In this document: piece after piece, positions 2,536-46,733 of the stretch
Numbering within the stretch: the first letter of the stretch is position 1
How the letters are laid out: each line of letters opens with the position of its first letter
Virus record (IMG/VR): IMGVR_UViG_3300005253_001115
Coordinates: 62,001-126,000 of that record
Length of the DNA: 64,000 nt
Direction: 5' to 3' (one strand)
The notes under the pieces: generated by a model
Seen by the model: the letters and a program-made list of their open reading frames with translations, nothing else
What the model was told of the DNA's origin: nothing
Database searches by the model: none
Position numbers and translations under genes: made by a program

Positions 2536-9004
<6,469 letters not shown>

Positions 9005-10925: not shown

Positions 10926-13199
<2,274 letters not shown>

Positions 13200-22371: not shown

Positions 22372-27431
<5,060 letters not shown>

Positions 27432-27434
27432 CCC

Positions 27435-28664
27435 GTGGCATCTAGAGCAATTCGCAATACAACCCTATCAGATATTTTTCTGGATGATATTGGGACTCGT
27501 ATTCCTGCGAGCACGATCCTCGAAATTCATCCGTCTAATGTTCAACTGTGGCACAATTCCGCAGACGGCGGCGACGCCGAGCCCTTCATCGACAATGGCG
27601 ACCTAGTTGTTTCTGACGAGAACGGAGATCTTGCCCCAGACCACGGCAAGAGCTTCCTAAAGCTGGACCATGTTCACATCCAGATCAACGGGGTACCGCA
27701 TTACGGGTCCGTTAAGGTCATCAATTTTGAGGGAGCCACAGGCAGCACCGCCGTTGGCTCTATCGTCAACATCTCAGGCTTGCAGGGTGAAACTGGCCTG
27801 ACTGGAAATGTTGGCGCTTCGGGCACTACAGGCACCCAAGGTACCACGGGTGAGACAGGAGCAACTGGAGAAACTGGAGCAACTGGTATCACAGGAGCCT
27901 CTGGTGAAACAGGTGCTACAGGTTCGACAGGACAGACTGATTTTCAAGACGTGATTGTTTTGAATGTAGAAGCACCAGTAGATGGTGATGAGGTCTGTCT
28001 AGAAGCTTTCGCATTCTATCCGTATGAAATTCTTAGCATCGGACAACACACTAGCGTGGGTTACATCGAGACCACAATCAAAGTGGCTGGCGCTACTGTT
28101 GGTGCATTCGAAGAGCTGTCAGCCACAGCAGGGTCTACAGCTACAGACGCAACGGGTGAAACAGGCGTAGCAATCGGTGACGATGTTTCCATCTCGTTCA
28201 CTGGGTCCTCTACAGGCCCCGCCAACTACTGCATGTCCATGAATATTCGTAGGTTGAATCCCCAGGATAACGACTTCATCGGCAGCACCGGAGCAACTGG
28301 CATCGCAGGAGCCTCGGGCGAGACAGGAGCAACGGGTGCCTTCGATATCGAGCAGCTTGAGCTTTATTGGCAGGGTAACCTTTCGAATCTGCTAGTAGAT
28401 ATCACGCTTGTAGAAAACGCCTTCTATACTTTCGACGTGCATGAAGTATGCCGCTCAGTGAGTGCGGGTTCTGCAACATTAGACTTCAAAATCGAAGGAA
28501 CTTCCATCGGTGGTCTTGGCGCTCTGGCTGCAACGGCGGGTTCGACCTGCGCCAGTGAGACTGGTGCCAATAGCGTGGCTATTGGGGAAAAGCTCAGCTT
28601 GGGCGTAACAGGCGTCTCCAGCGGTGCCAACTTGGCTATCTCTATGAAGACGACTAGGACATAA
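27435..28664 (+). CDS. Short-collagen protein with two KTTR-type C-terminal modules
   Basis: GTG start. [11 protein letters not shown]...PAS N-terminus as in 25359; ends LAISMKTTRT. Confidence 0.78.
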   Translation: MASRAIRNTTLSDIFLDDIGTRIPASTILEIHPSNVQLWHNSADGGDAEPFIDNGDLVVSDENGDLAPDHGKSFLKLDHVHIQINGVPHYGSVKVINFEGATGSTAVGSIVNISGLQGETGLTGNVGASGTTGTQGTTGETGATGETGATGITGASGETGATGSTGQTDFQDVIVLNVEAPVDGDEVCLEAFAFYPYEILSIGQHTSVGYIETTIKVAGATVGAFEELSATAGSTATDATGETGVAIGDDVSISFTGSSTGPANYCMSMNIRRLNPQDNDFIGSTGATGIAGASGETGATGAFDIEQLELYWQGNLSNLLVDITLVENAFYTFDVHEVCRSVSAGSATLDFKIEGTSIGGLGALAATAGSTCASETGANSVAIGEKLSLGVTGVSSGANLAISMKTTRT

Positions 28665-33000: not shown

Positions 33001-36000
33001 ATGGCATCCAATCCTAGTTTTCGACTGGTAAACACGCGATACGTGCCGCCCGGTGTATACATCGGACAGCTCATTATCCCCAGGCCCACGAACCTCACGG
33101 CAGACGCAAGGCTGCCCGCCTTCATTGGCGTTGGTAACCGATTGGCCGAGGGTAAAAACATCGCGATTCGGCGCTCTTTCATCTTCGAAGAGTCGCTTGC
33201 GTTTACGTCACTTTCACCCCACGTAGCGCAGCTCGTATTCAATGCAGATCAGGACCAGAACGCTCCGGGCATCCAGCTCCGTAAGCAGGACGGTACTGTC
33301 GTGCGTACTGACTTCTGGAACTTCACAGAGAGCGTAAGCGACAGCGGTGTATTCGATCAGGTAACCATCTCGCTAGAGGCTTTCGATCCGACTGCCACCT
33401 ACCTCATTGATTACCAGTCAGTCGAGCGCACCCCGCAGGATGTGATTCCGGTCGAGGAACTTCGAGAAGTTGTTACCGTTGGACTGTCGGAGGATGCTCC
33501 CCAGTTCCGAGAGAACATCGACTTCTTCATCGTAACTGATGTAACTGACCCGCTTGCTGACCTTGGTAACGTAAACACGGACTCGGTTCCCGAGGCGGTT
33601 TCGGCCGACGCTGGTAACACGGGTGCCATGGTTATCACGCAGGCTACATCTTCCGAGTTCGCTCATAACTACAACCGCTACTATACTCTAGAGTGCAACA
33701 ATGCTTCAGGTTCTTCTCCGAACCGGACGGCTTCATTCCTTCTTCGCAGTATACCCGCTGGGGGCGGTAACAACGCCCTTCCGCCGCGACCACTAAACGC
33801 TATAGAGGCTGCTACTACTCTCGTGATTACAGAGGGAGTAAACCAGTTCAGTATCGAGATTGAACTTGGAATCGAGCTTGACTTCGCATTCCCGGCCGGT
33901 TCAGGTAACGCCGCAGTAGCAGATGAGTTCGCCTTCCACGGCTTTGGCCCTGGTCTGGTTGAGCCTGACGCTCGCTACGACAACACGAACCAATTCCCCG
34001 AAGCTACAGGCATTGTAGTTGGCGATTCGAACTCCGGCTCCGGCTCCATCGCCGTGGCCACTACGACGGACTTCACCCGTGACTTTAACACTGGGTTCTC
34101 CCTACGTGTTGTAGGCATCGCAGGTTCCTCTCCTACCCGGACAGTAACCTTCGCATGGGCGTCGTTCATCGAGCTTGGCCCGGACGGAACTTTCACGGCA
34201 GATGAGGCTGTACCCAACACGCTGACGGAGAGTCTAGCTTTCGGTGTCGATGTAGACATCAGCTTCGGCTCCTCGAACTTCGCAGTTGGTGACGACTTCG
34301 CCTTCATTGCAAATGCTCCGGCTCTACGGTACTCCGGTAAGGACAACCGAACTTACACCCTGACGACCGGCTCCACAGCCAACATCGTGAGCCTCCCTGT
34401 TGCTCAGACTGACCCGCTGACTAGCAGCCTCCTGTCCGTTCCCCGTGTTGTGGGTACTGCGGTTGGTGAGTTCAACACGGATACTCCTGAGGGCGGCTTC
34501 GGTTCCTACGAAGCTAGCCAGCAGAACTGGTTCGATCCGCTGAACCCTGATGCCCGCACCGGCCACTTTCTCTTCCCTGATAACGTCAAGATGGCGTTCC
34601 GTAATCAGTGTCGAGGCGATGGTTTCGCAGGTAACCGTGAGCAGGGTGGCGACAAGCACTCCTTCACTGCAAACGATCAGAACACCATCGACTGGAGCCT
34701 GGTACAGCAGCGAGAGCAAGAGTTTGAGACGGACGATCTTATCGTAGATGTAAATGGAACTGTTACGGGTATCCCTGGTCAGACCTACATCATTCTCGCT
34801 GAGATTCCTGAGGACGGCACTGTTGCGGTAGTTACCACTTCGGGTCTGGTTCCGGTAGCCTCGGTAGAGGTTCCTGGTTCTCCCTTCGTGTCACTTCCGG
34901 TGACTCCGACCGAGACGGTTACCGCCTCTTACGATACTCGTGGCTCTGAGCCCGATCCGGGTCAGCTCTACTACTTCACAGGAAACTTCCTGCGTGGTAC
35001 AGAACTGTACAACACTCCGATCCTTGTACTCGACCGTGATGACGGACGTACTCTCCTGGGTCCGCCCTCTGTAGACAACCATCTGCACATCACCAACGAG
35101 CTTGCGTTCGACAACAACGTATTCGGTGCCTATTACATTCAGGTAGCCGACGCAGACGAAGACGGCGTGTTCCAGCAGACAGACTTCAAGACGGCGCTTC
35201 TAGCAACCGAGAATGTGGAAACGATCACAGATCGCGTGGTCCTGGCCCGCCAGGACGCTTGGGGTGACCAGCTTGCAGTCAACGAGCGAGCCAACGATCC
35301 CTTCGCACGACGCGAGTCGCTTGATTGGTTCGGTGCTCCGATTGGTACCCCGATTGGTGACCGCCAGACTGCCGACACGCTTCGCTTCATTGCGGATAAG
35401 CCGCTACGAGTGTTCGGCAACTCCCCCTCCCACGGTACCAGAATTCTGGCAGGACCGACGCAGGCTACAGTTAACATCGTCCTACAGTCTGGTGATACCG
35501 TAGAGGTTACAGTTGACGGGTCGTTCGTCGCTGCCGCTCTGGCATCGCTAACAGCTAGTTTCGCAGATCCGGCCAACACGGTTCTCAAGAAGAACCTCGC
35601 TGGCTTCACGAGTGTACAGACGTACACCCCGAAGGAGAACGCGCTACTCGGTGATGCTGGTGCAATCTACGTAACCGATCTCGGTAACGGTGTCGTCCGT
35701 ATCGAAGAGGATACAACGGTTGACACGTTCGCCATTGACTTCTACCTAATCTCGGCCATGACGCAAAAGCAGTTCGTGACCAAGGTTGTACGTAGGGAGA
35801 TGGCTAACTCGGTCATCGCGCTGATCGTGCCTAGCGCTGCTGCCGGTGTTGGCATCATCAAGGCTAGCCTCTCTGCCATCTTGCTCGGCCTTCTTGGTCA
35901 AGGCATCATCGGTCAGTACGAGGACGATCAGCAAAACGTAAGGAAGTTTGACCCCGAGGCAGACGTGGTAGTTTTCCGAGATTCGGCAGATTCCACTCTC

Positions 36001-36105
36001 TACCACATGTTCTACGCATACTTCCTGCGATTCCCGATCAAGCGCGTGTTTGGTCTATTTACCGTAAACACAAACGATTTCGGCGTGGGGTCAGGTAACC
36101 CGTAA
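33001..36105 (+). CDS. Tail sheath protein
   Basis: N-terminal YVPPGVY motif and a C-terminal sheath-core pattern (SFVAAALASL...GF...AIYVT..GNG..RIEEDTT..F...IS...QK..V..VR...Y.LRFPIKR.F). The tube gene follows. Confidence 0.85.
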   Translation: MASNPSFRLVNTRYVPPGVYIGQLIIPRPTNLTADARLPAFIGVGNRLAEGKNIAIRRSFIFEESLAFTSLSPHVAQLVFNADQDQNAPGIQLRKQDGTVVRTDFWNFTESVSDSGVFDQVTISLEAFDPTATYLIDYQSVERTPQDVIPVEELREVVTVGLSEDAPQFRENIDFFIVTDVTDPLADLGNVNTDSVPEAVSADAGNTGAMVITQATSSEFAHNYNRYYTLECNNASGSSPNRTASFLLRSIPAGGGNNALPPRPLNAIEAATTLVITEGVNQFSIEIELGIELDFAFPAGSGNAAVADEFAFHGFGPGLVEPDARYDNTNQFPEATGIVVGDSNSGSGSIAVATTTDFTRDFNTGFSLRVVGIAGSSPTRTVTFAWASFIELGPDGTFTADEAVPNTLTESLAFGVDVDISFGSSNFAVGDDFAFIANAPALRYSGKDNRTYTLTTGSTANIVSLPVAQTDPLTSSLLSVPRVVGTAVGEFNTDTPEGGFGSYEASQQNWFDPLNPDARTGHFLFPDNVKMAFRNQCRGDGFAGNREQGGDKHSFTANDQNTIDWSLVQQREQEFETDDLIVDVNGTVTGIPGQTYIILAEIPEDGTVAVVTTSGLVPVASVEVPGSPFVSLPVTPTETVTASYDTRGSEPDPGQLYYFTGNFLRGTELYNTPILVLDRDDGRTLLGPPSVDNHLHITNELAFDNNVFGAYYIQVADADEDGVFQQTDFKTALLATENVETITDRVVLARQDAWGDQLAVNERANDPFARRESLDWFGAPIGTPIGDRQTADTLRFIADKPLRVFGNSPSHGTRILAGPTQATVNIVLQSGDTVEVTVDGSFVAAALASLTASFADPANTVLKKNLAGFTSVQTYTPKENALLGDAGAIYVTDLGNGVVRIEEDTTVDTFAIDFYLISAMTQKQFVTKVVRREMANSVIALIVPSAAAGVGIIKASLSAILLGLLGQGIIGQYEDDQQNVRKFDPEADVVVFRDSADSTLYHMFYAYFLRFPIKRVFGLFTVNTNDFGVGSGNP

Positions 36106-36129: not shown

Positions 36130-36513
36130 ATGCAAGGTTCACGACTTGTCACACTATGCAGGATTGCTGCCCATCTTGATTCCGAAAAAGTGGGGAAGCA
36201 CGCCCTTGCCGCACAGATCTACGACGTTCTTGCAACGCAGGTAGATCTGTCGCCCGAAGGTAAGAAGCTTCTTCAGGACTTCTTCGGGTTTGGGGTAAAC
36301 GGCGAACAAGACTTCGAGGTAGGAGATTTCGGCGAGAACGTGCCGGAGTCCGACTATCAAACGAAGCGAGATCCTTTCCTTGATCCGTCCTCGGAGCGAA
36401 TGCCTGAGCCTAAGAGCGATATGCTCGCGGGTGTCAATGAGGCTGCCGCTGCTTTGGAGAGTCATGGGGAGTTCGTTCTTGCTCGGGCCTTGAGGTTCGA
36501 GTACGGAGCGTAA
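36130..36513 (+). CDS. Hypothetical protein
   Basis: AAGGAG SD. Its stop abuts the ATG of the endonuclease. Confidence 0.7.
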   Translation: MQGSRLVTLCRIAAHLDSEKVGKHALAAQIYDVLATQVDLSPEGKKLLQDFFGFGVNGEQDFEVGDFGENVPESDYQTKRDPFLDPSSERMPEPKSDMLAGVNEAAAALESHGEFVLARALRFEYGA

Positions 36514-37302
36514 ATGGTTTACGGTAGGATCTACAAAGCTGAATTCCCTAATGGGAAGCTGTATGTAGGTCTTACCACCATGCGTTTGAAGATCCGGGTA
36601 GACTGTCACATGGGTTCTTCTCGTTCCCAGAAGCATAGAGGATGTGTAGCTTTTAACAATGCCATCCGAAAGCATGGGAAACCCGTCTTCACGGAACTTT
36701 GCACAGCGGACTCTAAGGAAGAATTGGACGCAGCGGAAGTACATTGGATTGCTAAATTGGGAACTATGGTTCCGGCTGGTTACAACATCAAAGAAGGTGG
36801 CGGTAACGGTAAGCACTCTGGAGAAACTAAGCGGAAGATGAGTAAGACCCGTGCAGGCATGAAAATGCCTCCCAGAACGCCGGAACAGTGCCTGAACTAT
36901 CGAAGGCTTGGTGAGCAGAACGCTAATTTCGGGAACCCTCGCAGTGCTGAGACACGCCAAAAAATAGGCGACGCACAGCGGGGCAATAAGAATCACCGAT
37001 TCGGAGCCAAGTGGGACGAAGAGCACTTGGTTATGTTTAGTGAAAGGCAACTAGGGGAAAAGAATCATTTTCACGGCCAGAAGCACACTGCTTCCGCTAA
37101 AGACAAGATGTCTGCGAAAAAGAGAAAATTCTCCAAAGAAGATGTAATTGAGATCTTACGACGCTCGGGGGAAGGCGAAACTCAAAAAAGTATCGCAAAA
37201 TCCTATAGTGTGAGCCCGACAACAATTAGTAGAGCTATCAACGGAAAACGCCGTTGCTACTCTAACCAAGGAGCAATAATGCCTAACCCTTCGCCTCAGT
37301 AA
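36514..37302 (+). CDS. Free-standing GIY-YIG homing endonuclease (NUMOD3 repeats, C-terminal HTH)
   Basis: GRIY-x9-LYVGLT, AE.HWI....T..P.GYN, KHSGETKRKMS / RSAETRQKIG / KHTASAKDKMS. The C-terminus reads through tube exon 1 (MPNPSP), and the TAA lies 4 nt inside the intron. Confidence 0.88.
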   Translation: MVYGRIYKAEFPNGKLYVGLTTMRLKIRVDCHMGSSRSQKHRGCVAFNNAIRKHGKPVFTELCTADSKEELDAAEVHWIAKLGTMVPAGYNIKEGGGNGKHSGETKRKMSKTRAGMKMPPRTPEQCLNYRRLGEQNANFGNPRSAETRQKIGDAQRGNKNHRFGAKWDEEHLVMFSERQLGEKNHFHGQKHTASAKDKMSAKKRKFSKEDVIEILRRSGEGETQKSIAKSYSVSPTTISRAINGKRRCYSNQGAIMPNPSPQ

Positions 37303-38096
37303 GGGGCCTTCGAGGAGTAATCCTCGTCGCAAATTCGGTGAATTCGGGGGAACCCCAAACAAGTAAAGTTGTGGGCAATCCCGAGCGAAGCCTAGAAGGA
37401 AACTTCTAGGAACGTGTAACGACTAGACCAGAGCCTAAAGCTTTAGCCACGGCAGTAAGGGTCACTCGGTTGGAGCAATCCTTCAGAGAAGCGCCGGACA
37501 TCCTAGCGGATGATGATATAGTCTGGTCCCTAGTGAAAGTTAGGGAGGTTGGCAGAAATGACCAGCCCTTACCTCGGTAAGTAACAAAACCGTTTGCAAC
37601 CAATGCTTTTGACGTTACGGTGCAGCCGCTCGAACAGGGCGCTGCTGGAGCGCCTACGACGAAGACGTACCACGGTATGTCCATTGTCGTTGGAGGCAAC
37701 ATCGTTGGACGTATCCAGTCATGGCAGCCCAACGCTTACACCCGTGAGGGTGCCCATGTTCGTGAGCTTTCTCACGTAACCTGGGGTCGTCCGATCGACT
37801 ACGTTCCGGGTCAGGCTACTGGCTATACCGTTAGCTTCACTCGCGTGGAAGTTTGGAATCAGGAGCTTGAGCTTACGCTAGGTTTCGGATCGGTCTTTGA
37901 TGACCTCATGGACCAGACTCGCCCGTGGGTTACCCAGGAATATCTCTTCCGTGGTAACGAGCTAAACAAGCTCTGGCAGTACAGCGGTTGCTGGTTCCAG
38001 ACCAAGAACAACAACAACTGGGAGTCAGGCGGCGACGCGATCGTTACGGTCGAGTGTGAGCTGGCTTACGTCTCCCGAGTAAGAGTGGCCGGATAA
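37279..38096 (+). CDS. Tail tube protein, spliced: join(37279..37296, 37593..38096), 173 aa
   Basis: AAGGAG SD at 37268 before ATG 37279. The spliced frame MPNPSP|FATNAFDVTVQPLEQG... continues into a T4 gp19-like tube fold (IGRIQSWQPN..R....VREL...P...VPG...Y.....R.E). Confidence 0.82.
37297..37592 (+). mobile_element. Group I intron (IA-like, 296 nt, no internal ORF)
   Basis: P1 GCCUC/GGGGC with a U.G pair at exon-terminal U37296; P2 37311-37326; P3 UUCGGUG/CGCCGGA; AAUCCCGAGC (Q); P6 hairpin 37391-37410; R GUGUAACGACUA; S AUGAUAUAGUC (P7 GACUA/UAGUC); P8 CAUCC/GGAUG; P9 hairpins; P9.0 GGU(37525)/ACC before terminal G37592. Splicing restores the reading frame. Confidence 0.9.
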
Positions 38097-38974
38097 TGGC
38101 TAAGCCCATCGAGTTCAACTGGACTACGCAGGAACGGATCAAGAGCCACGAGGAATATCTTCGTGGTACTCGGTCCCAGCCCCAGTCCCTTGCTGCTTCG
38201 TTGAACTGGACAACAGCCGTCGCCCCCGATACCGTCATTGATGAAGAAATGCCGGACGTTCTTGATCCCGATGTCAAGTTCCCCGACACCCTCGTGGATG
38301 ATCCCAAGGATAGCGACGACGCTGTGGATCATTCTGACGGTACCAAGCCGCACGATACCAGTGCGGCTCTCTCCTTCGCCACAAACTGGGACGCTCTGCT
38401 TGATACAGCAGGCGTTCCGACCGACGGCACCCCTCCCGATCCACTAGCAGCTCAGCAGCAGCAAGAGCAACTTGAGGAGCAGGCCGCACGACAGGCTCAG
38501 ATGATGGGTCGAGATAACGGCGGCTCACAACCCGGAATTACCAGCCCGCAGATGCCCTCTGCTCCCGCTTCTCCGCAGGTGCAGGATAAGGCCAAGCAAC
38601 GACAGCGTGCTGGCCGTGGCGTTGAGGGCGGACTAGCAGCTTGCGGGATGTTTGTAGCAGAAGCATGCCCTGATGGGGAGTGCGACAACTGCCCCTGTAA
38701 ACAGGGTATACAGGCTGCGGCTTGTGGTGTTATGCTAGCAACAGCGTGCCCGGGCAATGGGGGGTGCGGCAACAAGGTTGCTCTACTGCGTTGCCCAGAT
38801 GTCCGGGGACCAAAAAACCTTATGCCCGTTGCCAATAGAAACTGCCCAAACGGTTCTCCTATGCCTGCCGAAGGCTGCGGTGACTGCCCGGGTTGCGACG
38901 AAGATCCGACCAACCCCATGGACCCCGGGAATAAGTACGATTGGGACAGTTTCTCAACTACTCCCCGCGTCTAA
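38096..38974 (+). CDS. Hypothetical protein with Cys-rich C-terminus
   Basis: TAATG coupling to the tube gene. About a dozen Cys in the last ~115 aa. Confidence 0.7.
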   Translation: MAKPIEFNWTTQERIKSHEEYLRGTRSQPQSLAASLNWTTAVAPDTVIDEEMPDVLDPDVKFPDTLVDDPKDSDDAVDHSDGTKPHDTSAALSFATNWDALLDTAGVPTDGTPPDPLAAQQQQEQLEEQAARQAQMMGRDNGGSQPGITSPQMPSAPASPQVQDKAKQRQRAGRGVEGGLAACGMFVAEACPDGECDNCPCKQGIQAAACGVMLATACPGNGGCGNKVALLRCPDVRGPKNLMPVANRNCPNGSPMPAEGCGDCPGCDEDPTNPMDPGNKYDWDSFSTTPRV

Positions 38975-45398: not shown

Positions 45399-46733
45399 AT
45401 GGCACATGATCCTGGCTCACCGTTTGGGACAGAAGAGCATGCACTGGACCCCGCGCTAGAGGGCGGCGAAGCCGGACCTACAGGTGCGCCTGATCCTACC
45501 GGCCCCACGGCCCCTAGCCTGATACCTTTCGGCCCCACTGGAACAACAGGAGAGCAAGGTCCCACAGGTCCGGCTGGCGCTCCCACGGGCGAAACTGGAG
45601 CTACAGGTAGCATCGGCAACATCGGCAACACTGGTAATACAGGAGCCGGAGAGACGGGTGCCGCAGGACCGCAAGGTGCTTCTGGACAAACTGGTGAGAC
45701 AGGACCCGCAGGAGCCACCGACGGCAGCACAGGCCCCGCAGGTTCTACAGGAGAAACTGGAACCGCAGGAGTCCAGGGTGACCAGGGCAGCACTGGTCTT
45801 ACCGGGGTCGGGACCACAGGTTCCGTAGGCTCGCAAGGTGCCGCAGGCATCCAGGGACAAACAGGACTCACAGGTGCCAACAGCACTGTAGAGGGACCGA
45901 CAGGAACCACAGGACCGCAGGGCGAGGGAATCACAGGAAATACCGGCGCGCAAGGCGACACAGGTCTTCAGGGTCCGGCCGGAACTGGAGCCCAGGGTAA
46001 CACTGGACCTGCTGGTGTTGAGGGTGATAAGGGAAACAAGGGAAACACAGGCACCCAAGGTGAGAGTGGTCCTACTGGACCCTCTGGCGGTCCTATCGGT
46101 GCTACGGGAGACACAGGTAACACTGGAAACACAGGTGTTGGTGACGAGGGACCTGTTGGGCCTACCGGTCCCACTGGAAACGTCACTGGTGACCTTGTGC
46201 CTCACCGAGCCAACTCGTTCACCGATGAGAGGCACCTTACTGACGGGCAGTGGGCTGCTGCTGCGGGAACGTTCGGCACGCCCAGCAACACCAACCGCTA
46301 CGTTACCGAACAGGACTCCAGGGTACAGGGATCGTTTACTTACCAGGGGGCGAATGTGTGGGGCGGTGACTCTATTCCTTGGATACAAGGCACACCTGTT
46401 GTACTGTCCTGGGCGTCTGAAATAGACGACGTTGGTGACTGGTTTAGCGGTCCCGGTGCAGACCGTTTTATCGTGCCCTCTGGAGTGTCCCGTATCCGAG
46501 CTACGGCTGAACTATGGCCACAGGATGCCAGTTTTACACATGAACTTATTGTGAGGGACAACTCCGGCGGTGAGACGGTCTGGAGTCATAGTGCCGTACC
46601 AGAAGTAAGAACTTTGCTAGTTACTGGACCTGTTGCTGTGTTTGCGGGATATCAGATCTACGTCAGATCCACTCGGAACCAGACAGGTAGCACATCTATA
46701 ACCAGTAGCTTCACGATCGAGAAGGTCGCTTAG
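45399..46733 (+). CDS. Collagen-like fibre protein
   Basis: [21 protein letters not shown] leader, about 240 aa of collagen and a beta-rich C-terminus. Confidence 0.85.

What the first reader, a model, noticed from the sequence alone, without database searches (positions are those of the whole stretch)
36514..38096. Splicing-controlled endonuclease/tail-tube switch: the HEG stop codon lies inside the tail-tube intron
Seen: the GIY-YIG ORF runs in frame through the SD, ATG and 6-codon exon 1 of the tube gene and stops at TAA 37300-37302, 4 nt inside the intron. Unspliced RNA gives a free 262-aa endonuclease and no tube. Spliced RNA gives the 173-aa tube from its own SD and, from the upstream start, a 428-aa endonuclease-tube fusion with no free HEG. 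Known: free-standing HEGs next to ORF-less introns perform collaborative homing (for example in cyanophage psbA). Inference: here splicing would set HEG output, and fusion subunits might be built into the tail or delivered to the host. I know of no described case like this.
Basis: partly seen in the sequence, partly recalled or inferred. Interest (0 to 1): 0.92.

Follow-up and report, generated by a model that had tools for sequence, protein, structure and literature searches.

The report
Homing endonuclease abutting tail-tube intron
Two selfish DNA elements, a free-standing homing endonuclease gene and a self-splicing intron, sit side by side at the start of a giant phage's tail-tube gene; the endonuclease gene ends inside the intron only because of a recent 4-base deletion found in this one lineage, so it looks like an accident, not a built-in switch.

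Summary
A 262-aa GIY-YIG/NUMOD3/HTH ORF (36514-37302) runs in frame through the tube gene's SD, ATG (37279) and 6-codon exon 1. It stops at TAA 37300-37302, 4 nt inside a genuine group I intron (37297-37592; Rfam 76.8 bits). Intron-less relatives read MPNPSP|FATNAFDV, so the predicted splice junction is exact.

The "switch" reading is not supported as an evolved device. Related uncultivated jumbo phages show about 20 alleles at this site: pristine, endonuclease only (own stop), intron plus endonuclease relic, and endonuclease plus intron. In the three other endonuclease-plus-intron alleles (L009, L016, L080) the endonuclease stops at a TAA overlapping tube codons 2-3 in the +1 frame. The window differs from its nearest relative (L009) by a 4-nt deletion (GTGC, at 37275|37276) in otherwise identical sequence, and that deletion creates the in-frame read-through. 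The stop just inside the intron is an intron feature, since all five copies have one.

Best reading: a mobile-element hotspot resembling collaborative homing, with an incidental ORF overlap. A 428-aa fusion from spliced RNA remains a plausible but untested by-product.

The parts
33001..36105 (+). Tail sheath-like gene (1034 aa), first gene of the sheath-p127-[HEG]-tube block.
   Evidence: phrog_279 tail sheath, E 3e-6. The same gene order is found in L002, L003, L004, L011 and L014.
36130..36513 (+). Conserved 127-aa gene of unknown function. Its TAA stop directly abuts the HEG ATG.
   Evidence: ORF list. It is present at 72-100% identity in all close relatives.
36474..36510 (+). RNA hairpin at the 3' end of the 127-aa gene. 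Its 3' strand contains the GGAG that serves as the HEG's SD.
   Evidence: MFE -21.1 kcal/mol, z -3.1. Comparable hairpins occur in HEG-less alleles L002 and L018, so it is native and was not brought in by the HEG.
36514..37302 (+). Free-standing GIY-YIG homing endonuclease ORF (262 aa). The last 8 codons are the tube ATG, the rest of exon 1, one intron codon (CAG) and the intron's TAA.
   Evidence: Pfam GIY-YIG, NUMOD3 x2 and HTH; phrog_314. Homologues of 62-68% identity sit at the same site in other phages. GC is 45-50% against 54-60% in the flanks.
37268..37273 (+). AAGGAG Shine-Dalgarno of the tube gene, lying inside the HEG ORF, 5 nt before the ATG.
   Evidence: Read directly from the sequence.
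37275..37276 (+). Junction of a 4-nt deletion (GTGC) relative to L009. It shifts the HEG frame from +1 to in frame with the tube ATG.
   Evidence: Pairwise alignment of window and L009. L009, L016 and L080 all have 16 nt from GGAG through the ATG; the window has 12.
37279..37296 (+). Tube exon 1 (ATG plus 5 codons, MPNPSP).
   Evidence: Intron-less alleles read MPNPSPFATN.
37297..37592 (+). ORF-less group I intron, 296 nt, ending in G.
   Evidence: Rfam RF00028 at 76.8 bits. Four homologous copies score 65-75 bits. Twelve base pairs carry compensatory changes.
37293..37307 (+). P1 helix: G93-C07, C94-G06, C95-G05, U96.G04 (5' splice site) and C97-G03, with loop AGUAA.
   Evidence: RNAalifold consensus, all four sequences (columns 15-19 paired with 28-32).
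37300..37302 (+). TAA in frame with exon 1, and hence with the HEG ORF. It lies in the P1 loop, within the candidate P10 guide GUAAG (37299-37303).
   Evidence: Sequence. The equivalent in-frame stop sits at intron +4 in L009 (TAA) and L004 (TAG), and at +7 in L016 and L080.
37593..38096 (+). Tube exon 2 (167 codons plus stop). Its first bases UUUGC can pair with GUAAG (P10, derived by hand).
   Evidence: Homologues at 87-99% identity. Foldseek top hits are Hcp, contractile-injection-system tube and phage tail-tube proteins, from a low-confidence model.

Best explanation
Two independent selfish elements share a hotspot at the 5' end of the tail-tube gene of an uncultivated jumbo myovirus. One is a promoter-less, free-standing GIY-YIG homing endonuclease cassette inserted directly after the stop codon of the upstream 127-aa gene. 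[quoted passage not shown] Shown: both elements are present or absent polymorphically among close relatives, the splice junction is exact, and the intron keeps its structure through compensatory changes. [quoted passage not shown] In this lineage a recent 4-nt deletion moved it into the tube frame, so it now runs on to the intron's own stop. Inferred: the genes are co-transcribed. Ribosomes that reach the 5' splice site before splicing release a free endonuclease with a tail only slightly different from its relatives' (...NQGAIMPNPSPQ against ...NQGAVHNA). While they occupy exon 1 and the P1 loop they delay P1 formation. Ribosomes that start at the endonuclease ATG on already spliced RNA would make a 428-aa endonuclease-tube fusion. 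This is probably a minor, tolerated by-product, because the endonuclease's SD is buried in a hairpin and initiation likely depends on coupling to the 127-aa gene. Inferred: the endonuclease cuts endonuclease-less alleles near this site. The intron, 18-45 nt away, is then carried along by co-conversion (collaborative or trans homing).
For: The intron is supported. The junction comes from intron-less alleles. The allele series is as follows. Pristine: L002, L018-L021 and L026-L029. HEG only, with its own stop: L011-13/24, L014/15/32, L022, L025, L030. HEG relics: L003 and L004. HEG plus intron: the window, L009/10, L016 and L080. The +1-frame TAA stop is seen in L009, L016 and L080, and the 4-nt deletion lies within otherwise identical flanks. 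All five intron-bearing alleles have a HEG or a HEG footprint; none of 9 pristine alleles has the intron. No terminator-like or promoter-like site lies between the HEG and the tube gene. The HEG SD is sequestered in a hairpin. Literature: in-frame stops just inside bacterial and phage group I introns, and collaborative homing (PMC3984707); free-standing HEGs as promoter-less cassettes under translational control, and HEG translation interfering with splicing (PMC2988022).
Against: There are no expression, splicing or cleavage data. The endonuclease's target site is unknown. HEG-only alleles show that the intron is not needed for self-immunity. The transcription units are inferred only from gene spacing and from the absence of consensus signals, and this phage's promoters are unknown. 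The HEG-intron association (Fisher one-sided about 0.03) is not corrected for phylogeny. The in-frame junction is seen in only two assembly records, which may derive from the same sample.
Confidence: 0.72

Rival explanations
1. This is an evolved splicing-controlled switch. Under this view splicing efficiency sets the ratio of free endonuclease to endonuclease-tube fusion. The fusion would have a function, for example being built into the tail or delivered into cells.
For: The reading-frame logic is correct. No terminator-like site separates the genes. The HEG ORF is full length here, while relatives show decay. The first 33 tube residues are modelled as disordered, so an N-terminal extension is not obviously incompatible with the fold.
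Against: The arrangement is private to one lineage and is explained by a 4-nt deletion in otherwise identical sequence. Three other HEG+intron alleles and all HEG-only alleles terminate the HEG separately. The in-intron stop predates the overlap. An in-frame outcome is a 1-in-3 chance event.
Confidence: 0.06
2. The arrangement has no consequence because the endonuclease is not translated, or is already inactive, in this phage. In that case neither free enzyme nor fusion is made in meaningful amounts.
For: The HEG's SD lies in the 3' strand of a stable hairpin. The Pfam GIY-YIG score is marginal (22.9 against a cut-off of 22.6). Decayed copies at the same site (L003, L004, L009, L080) show that these HEGs are inactivated quickly.
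Against: The ORF is intact at 262 aa and aligns end to end with 251-258-aa homologues, keeping the N-terminal YGRIY...YVG motif, the NUMOD3 motifs and the HTH. The TAA-ATG abutment with the upstream gene allows translational coupling, as proposed for T4 mobE (PMC2988022).
Confidence: 0.15
3. The 4-nt deletion is an assembly or sequencing artefact, and the real phage has the L009-type junction with a +1-frame stop.
For: The evidence comes from metagenome assemblies only. The two records carrying it (the IMG/VR contig and LAZR01000542.1) may share reads.
Against: Both records show the junction, and they differ elsewhere by 1 mismatch in 5501 nt, so they are not copies of one assembly. The site is not a homopolymer or a simple repeat.
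Confidence: 0.07

Closest known systems
[quoted passage not shown] Examples are F-CphI with the cyanophage S-PM2 psbA intron, and T4 mobE with the nrdB intron and defunct I-TevIII (PMC3984707, PMC2790892, PMC6083498).
   Same: A free-standing HEG lies adjacent to an intron that has no ORF. Both elements are polymorphic among relatives. The intron is found only where a HEG or a HEG relic is present.
   Different: The host gene is a tail-tube gene of an uncultivated jumbo phage. The HEG lies immediately upstream and overlaps exon 1. Whether the HEG's target coincides with the intron insertion site is untested. HEG-only alleles exist, so the intron is not required for immunity.
T4 td intron and I-TevI: interplay between endonuclease translation and splicing (PMC2988022, citing Gibb and Edgell 2010).
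   Same: The 3' end of the HEG ORF reaches into intron structure (here the P1 5' strand and loop). Ribosomes translating the HEG should therefore compete with ribozyme folding. The HEG's SD is sequestered in a hairpin.
   Different: I-TevI is encoded inside the intron and never reads across a splice site. Here the HEG is outside the intron and crosses the 5' splice site, so splicing changes the ORF's downstream sequence.
In-frame stop codons just inside bacterial and phage group I introns (PMC3984707).
   Same: All five intron copies carry a stop in the exon-1 frame at intron +4 or +7.
   Different: In this one allele the same stop also ends an upstream gene.
Staphylococcus phage Twort orf142, a tail-tube gene interrupted by group I introns (PMC11878797).
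   Same: A group I intron sits in a myovirus tail-tube gene. The intron core resembles staphylococcal phage introns at 75-81% identity over 60-120 nt.
   Different: The phage lineage is unrelated, there is a single intron after codon 6, and a HEG is adjacent.
Mitochondrial group I intron ORFs fused in frame to the upstream exon (my own knowledge; not checked here).
   Same: An endonuclease reading frame is continuous with host-gene coding sequence across a splice site.
   Different: The topology is reversed. There the exon precedes the intron ORF and the fusion is made from unspliced RNA. Here the HEG precedes the exon and the fusion would come from spliced RNA.
Clostridium difficile c-di-GMP riboswitch coupled to a group I intron (PMC3984707).
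   Same: The splicing outcome decides what is translated.
   Different: That system is a conserved, ligand-controlled regulatory device. Nothing comparable is conserved here.

Membership tests
Group I self-splicing intron (Rfam RF00028) | Match to the covariance model above the gathering score | tested here: met
   76.8 bits against a gathering score of 50 in the window. Copies in L004, L009, L016 and L080 score 65-75 bits, and there is none in L002 or L011.
Group I self-splicing intron (Rfam RF00028) | P1 helix with a U.G pair at the 5' splice site, and a terminal G at the 3' end | tested here: met
   U37296.G37304 lies within a 5-bp P1 in all four aligned copies. All five copies end in G.
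Group I self-splicing intron (Rfam RF00028) | Core helices maintained by compensatory substitutions | tested here: met
   12 of 82 predicted pairs show changes on both sides with pairing kept, among only 4 sequences.
Group I self-splicing intron (Rfam RF00028) | Removal restores the uninterrupted host ORF seen in intron-less alleles | tested here: met
   MPNPSP|FATNAFDV in L002, L003 and more than 10 other alleles.
Group I self-splicing intron (Rfam RF00028) | GTP-dependent self-splicing | not testable with these tools
   This needs in vitro transcription and a splicing assay.
GIY-YIG homing endonuclease, free-standing (Seg-like, with an I-TevI-like modular build) | N-terminal GIY-YIG domain, NUMOD linker motifs and a C-terminal HTH DNA-binding domain | tested here: met
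   PF01541 at 22.9 bits (cut-off 22.6, marginal), PF07460 at 48 bits (two stretches) and HTH families over residues 203-246. phrog_314 at E 2.7e-30. A profile search of PDB sequences found nothing.
GIY-YIG homing endonuclease, free-standing (Seg-like, with an I-TevI-like modular build) | Presence/absence polymorphism at a fixed site between conserved genes | tested here: met
   The same site, directly after the 127-aa gene's stop, is empty in at least 9 alleles. In others it is occupied by at least three HEG lineages or relics.
GIY-YIG homing endonuclease, free-standing (Seg-like, with an I-TevI-like modular build) | Site-specific cleavage of HEG-less alleles | not testable with these tools
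   This needs a cleavage assay on L002-type DNA.
Collaborative / trans homing pair | An ORF-less intron adjacent to a free-standing HEG | tested here: met
   The intron has no ORF of its own, and the HEG ends 18 nt (ancestrally 5-8 nt past the tube ATG) from the 5' splice site.
Collaborative / trans homing pair | [quoted passage not shown] | not testable with these tools
   The target is unknown. HEG-only alleles (L011, L014, L022) show that immunity does not require the intron.
Collaborative / trans homing pair | Co-distribution of intron and HEG among alleles | tested here: inconclusive
   5 of 5 intron alleles carry a HEG or footprint, and 0 of 9 pristine alleles carry the intron. One-sided Fisher is about 0.03 (hand calculation), not corrected for phylogeny.
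Evolved splicing-dependent expression switch | The in-frame HEG/tube arrangement is conserved in relatives that carry both elements | tested here: not met
   L009, L016 and L080 end the HEG in the +1 frame inside exon 1. Only the window lineage is in frame, through a 4-nt deletion.
Contractile-tail tube protein (Hcp / gp19-like fold) | Tube fold, and a position after the sheath gene | tested here: inconclusive
   The AF2 model has low confidence (pLDDT 53.6). Even so, the top 27 Foldseek hits are all Hcp, CIS tube or phage tail-tube/neck chains (E down to 4e-4, TM 0.4-0.5). Synteny runs sheath, tube, then a tape-measure-like gene. Pfam and PDB sequence searches found nothing meaningful.

The most novel reading that the evidence does not exclude
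In this phage lineage the spliced late mRNA yields a detectable 428-aa endonuclease-tube fusion alongside normal tube protein, while free endonuclease is made only from not-yet-spliced RNA. This would be a natural case in which group I splicing kinetics partition the output of a selfish nuclease. Fusion subunits might reach virions.
Probability: 0.1. Interest if true: 0.7.

Novelty: new variant of a known kind. Interest (0 to 1): 0.35.

Why it matters
The locus is a compact natural series for the life cycle of homing elements: empty site, endonuclease alone, endonuclease plus intron, decayed endonuclease plus intron, and footprints. It sits in a structural (tail-tube) gene of uncultivated jumbo phages. 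The intron is found only next to an endonuclease or its relic, and at least two endonuclease lineages are involved. This adds comparative support to the idea that ORF-less introns ride on breaks made by neighbouring free-standing endonucleases. The in-frame allele is a ready-made natural construct for measuring how translation across a 5' splice site competes with group I splicing. As an evolved switch, however, it does not hold up.

Tried and rejected
- DNA and protein searches of cultured-phage records found only short intron-core matches to staphylococcal and Vibrio phage introns, plus one distant tube homologue. There is no cultured relative.
- Pfam gave nothing for the tube, the 127-aa protein, the sheath or the downstream gene.
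- Profile searches of PDB sequences with the tube and HEG alignments gave nothing meaningful.
- The AlphaFold model of the tube has low confidence. I therefore drew no conclusion about where its N-terminus lies in an assembled tube, and so none about whether a fusion could assemble.
- Sigma-70 promoter and intrinsic-terminator scans found nothing between the HEG and the tube gene, and fewer sites than shuffles overall. The T4 late-promoter motif TATAAATA is absent from the window. Transcription units therefore remain inferred.
- I considered alternative splice sites suggested by the Rfam P1 alignment: after U37290 or U37291, with a 3' site after G37581. I rejected them because the intron-less alleles and RNAalifold both support CCU|...G|UUU.
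- I considered the 175-nt and 66-nt spacers of L003 and L004 as plain intergenic DNA. I rejected this because both are HEG relics.

Full report
**1. The observation**

Reading 36300-38300 and the ORF table confirms each stated coordinate.
- An ATG ORF runs 36514..37302 and encodes 262 aa.
- The tube start codon is at 37279-37281. It is preceded by AAGGAG (37268-37273) and lies 765 nt (255 codons) after the HEG start, so it is in frame.
- Exon 1 is 37279-37296 (MPNPSP).
- The next codons are CAG TAA, so the stop (37300-37302) begins at intron position +4.
- Exon 2 starts at 37593, in frame with the mechanical ORF 37620..38096.
- This gives a 173-aa tube and, after splicing, a 428-aa continuous frame from the HEG ATG.

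The ORF carries GIY-YIG (marginal, 22.9 against a cut-off of 22.6 bits), two NUMOD3 motifs and a C-terminal HTH. It matches phrog_314 "homing endonuclease" at E 2.7e-30.

**2. The intron is real and the junction is exact**

Rfam's group I model matches 37279-37545 at 76.8 bits, against a gathering score of 50.

A scan of viral contigs with exon 2 found close relatives. In L002 (98% identity) and L003 (93%) the tube gene is uninterrupted and reads MPNPSPFATNAFDV. A metagenome scan added many more intron-less alleles, all with ...CC(T/C)|TT(T/C)G... at this point.

Four further copies of the intron occur at the same codon, in L004, L009/L010, L016 and L080. Rfam scores them at 65-75 bits.

An RNAalifold consensus of four copies gives a 5-bp P1 with U37296.G37304 at the splice site. 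Twelve pairs carry compensatory changes. All copies end in G.

By hand, the first exon-2 bases UUUGC can pair with GUAAG (37299-37303) as P10, so the TAA lies in the guide region of the P1 loop. The Rfam alignment suggested alternative splice sites, but the intron-less alleles exclude them.

**3. Context**

The window is the tail module of a large phage; its contig in IMG/VR is 266 kb. The module contains:
- many collagen-like fibre genes;
- a sheath-like gene (phrog_279);
- the conserved 127-aa gene, followed by the HEG and the tube gene;
- further on, a tape-measure-like gene.

The tube label rests on this synteny and on fold matches. The AlphaFold model is poor (pLDDT 53.6), yet its best PDB matches are uniformly Hcp, contractile-injection-system tube and phage tail-tube chains. 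No cultured phage is close.

**4. The allele series**

I combined the viral and metagenome loci with the contigs that encode the closest HEG homologues. I classified them by BLAST and read the junctions. The site between the 127-aa gene and the tube gene exists in these states:

| State | Alleles | Notes |
|---|---|---|
| a. Pristine, no intron | L002, L018-L021, L026-L029 | 27-31-nt spacer. L034 is also pristine here but has a different HEG upstream of the 127-aa gene. |
| b. HEG of the window's family (62-63% identity), no intron | L011-13/24, L014/15/32, L022 | HEG ends ...RAINGKRRCYAA then TAG (L022: a one-residue variant), 6 nt before the tube start. |
| c. Other HEG lineages (37-43% identity), no intron | L025/L023, L030 | Each has its own stop. 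|
| d. HEG relic, no intron | L003 | — |
| e. Intron plus HEG footprint | L004 | 66-nt footprint of the 3' end of an L030-type HEG. |
| f. HEG plus intron | window, L009/L010, L016, L080 | L009/L010: 95% identical HEG that has lost most of its catalytic domain. L016: 68% identity, intact. L080: frameshifted. |

So the intron and the HEG are separable. The HEG decays and is lost, as expected for homing elements. Every intron-bearing allele has a HEG or its relic next to it, while none of nine pristine alleles has the intron. A one-sided Fisher test gives about 0.03 (my own calculation, not corrected for phylogeny).

**5. Why the HEG stops inside the intron here**

In L009, L016 and L080 the HEG frame is +1 relative to the tube. 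It ends at the TAA contained in tube codons 2-3 (AATGCCTAA or AATGACTAA).

The window and L009 are 100% identical for more than 170 nt upstream and 45 nt downstream of one difference. L009 reads GGAGCA-GTGC-ATAATG, and the window lacks GTGC. L016 and L080 have the same 16-nt length as L009. The window's arrangement is therefore derived: a recent 4-nt deletion shifted the HEG into the tube frame.

In that frame the first stop is the intron's own. This stop is present in every copy of the intron (TAA or TAG at +4, TAA at +7), including L004, which has no intact HEG. It is the well-known in-frame stop of bacterial and phage group I introns (PMC3984707).

The same junction occurs in a second record, LAZR01000542.1, which differs by 1 mismatch in 5501 nt. 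This argues against a one-off assembly error, although the two records may share a sample.

**6. How it most likely works**

*Shown.* The anatomy above is established from sequence and comparison.

*Inferred: co-transcription.* The block sheath-p127-HEG-tube is probably co-transcribed.
- The gaps are 0-25 nt and no terminator-like or sigma-70-like site intervenes.
- Free-standing HEGs in T4 are typically promoter-less cassettes (PMC2988022).

*Inferred: HEG initiation is probably weak.*
- The HEG ATG abuts the TAA of the 127-aa gene.
- Its GGAG lies in the 3' strand of a stable hairpin, and that hairpin also exists in HEG-less alleles.
- Initiation is therefore probably coupled to translation of the upstream gene, as discussed for T4 mobE and for RBS-hairpin-controlled HEGs (PMC2988022).

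*Inferred: products.*
- Ribosomes that arrive before splicing terminate at UAA 37300-37302. They release a free endonuclease whose tail differs only slightly from that of relatives.
- While there, they cover exon 1 and the guide sequence and must leave before P1 can form.
- Ribosomes that start at the HEG ATG on spliced RNA would read on into exon 2 and make the 428-aa fusion.
- The tube's own SD and ATG give the normal 173-aa protein.
- I expect the fusion to be a minor, tolerated by-product. Nothing here shows that it is made, assembled or useful.

*Inferred: mobility.* The HEG probably cleaves HEG-less alleles nearby, and the intron, 18-45 nt away, is co-converted with it (collaborative or trans homing; PMC3984707, PMC2790892). 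HEG-only alleles show that the intron is not needed for immunity.

**7. Comparison with known systems**

| Known system | Similarity | Difference |
|---|---|---|
| Free-standing HEG with an ORF-less intron (F-CphI/psbA; mobE/nrdB) | The closest kind | Host gene, phage group, and the immediate upstream position overlapping exon 1 |
| T4 td intron / I-TevI | The ORF's 3' end enters intron structure and its translation disturbs splicing (PMC2988022) | I-TevI is encoded inside the intron |
| Twort orf142 (PMC11878797) | Group I introns in a tail-tube gene | Unrelated phage lineage |

I found no report of a free-standing HEG whose ORF ends inside the neighbouring intron. This was only a limited full-text search.

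**8. Verdict**

Novelty: a new variant of a known kind. The variant feature is a private, recent indel. Interest is moderate to low for the "switch". The value lies in the allele series and in the natural test construct for competition between translation and splicing.

Noticed in passing
L003:4808-4982: The 175-nt spacer between the 127-aa gene and the intron-less tube gene is an AT-rich HEG relic. It keeps a few N-terminal GIY-YIG codons (LSYGKIY), then a short ORF encoding an HTH tail with its own TAA.
   Followed up: partly
L004:4619-4684 versus L030:830-910: The 66-nt spacer upstream of the intron-containing tube gene in L004 is homologous to the 3' end of the L030/P0007-type HEG (...SASTVSNVLNSTLPCYRGA). 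The apparent 'intron-only' allele therefore carries a footprint of a different HEG lineage.
   Followed up: yes
L078:1190-1225 (HEG P0005, 57% identity): A related HEG sits in front of a different gene. It also ends ...AATGCCTAA, overlapping that gene's ATG-CCT-AAG. This shared 8-nt end may be part of the cassette or of its target site.
   Followed up: no
L034:1415-1888: A GIY-YIG HEG of another lineage (37% identity) lies upstream of the 127-aa gene, between it and the sheath gene. This points to a second insertion hotspot in the same block.
   Followed up: no
window 36474-36510; also L002, L011, L016, L018: A stable hairpin at the 3' end of the 127-aa gene includes GGAGCG just before the stop. 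It is present whether or not a HEG follows. Its native role (RNA stability, attenuation) is unknown.
   Followed up: partly
window 37329-37334 with 37592-37597: RNAalifold pairs GCAAAU (between P2 and P3) with the terminal G plus UUUGC of exon 2 in all four intron copies. This could be an alternative or competitor to P10, or a chance complement.
   Followed up: no
window 38096-38974: The gene after the tube is 292 aa here but 196-221 aa in relatives (L002, L003, L009, L011). The extra part is a Cys-rich stretch (repeated CP..C motifs). No family match was found.
   Followed up: no
window 4251-7346, 10926-13199, 22372-24789, 25359-26858, 27435-28664, 45399-46733: At least six large collagen-repeat tail-fibre-like genes lie within 64 kb, an unusually rich fibre set.
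   Followed up: no
window 36154-37050 (- strand): A 298-aa antisense ORF lies opposite the HEG and the 127-aa gene. It has no support and is most likely spurious.
   Followed up: no
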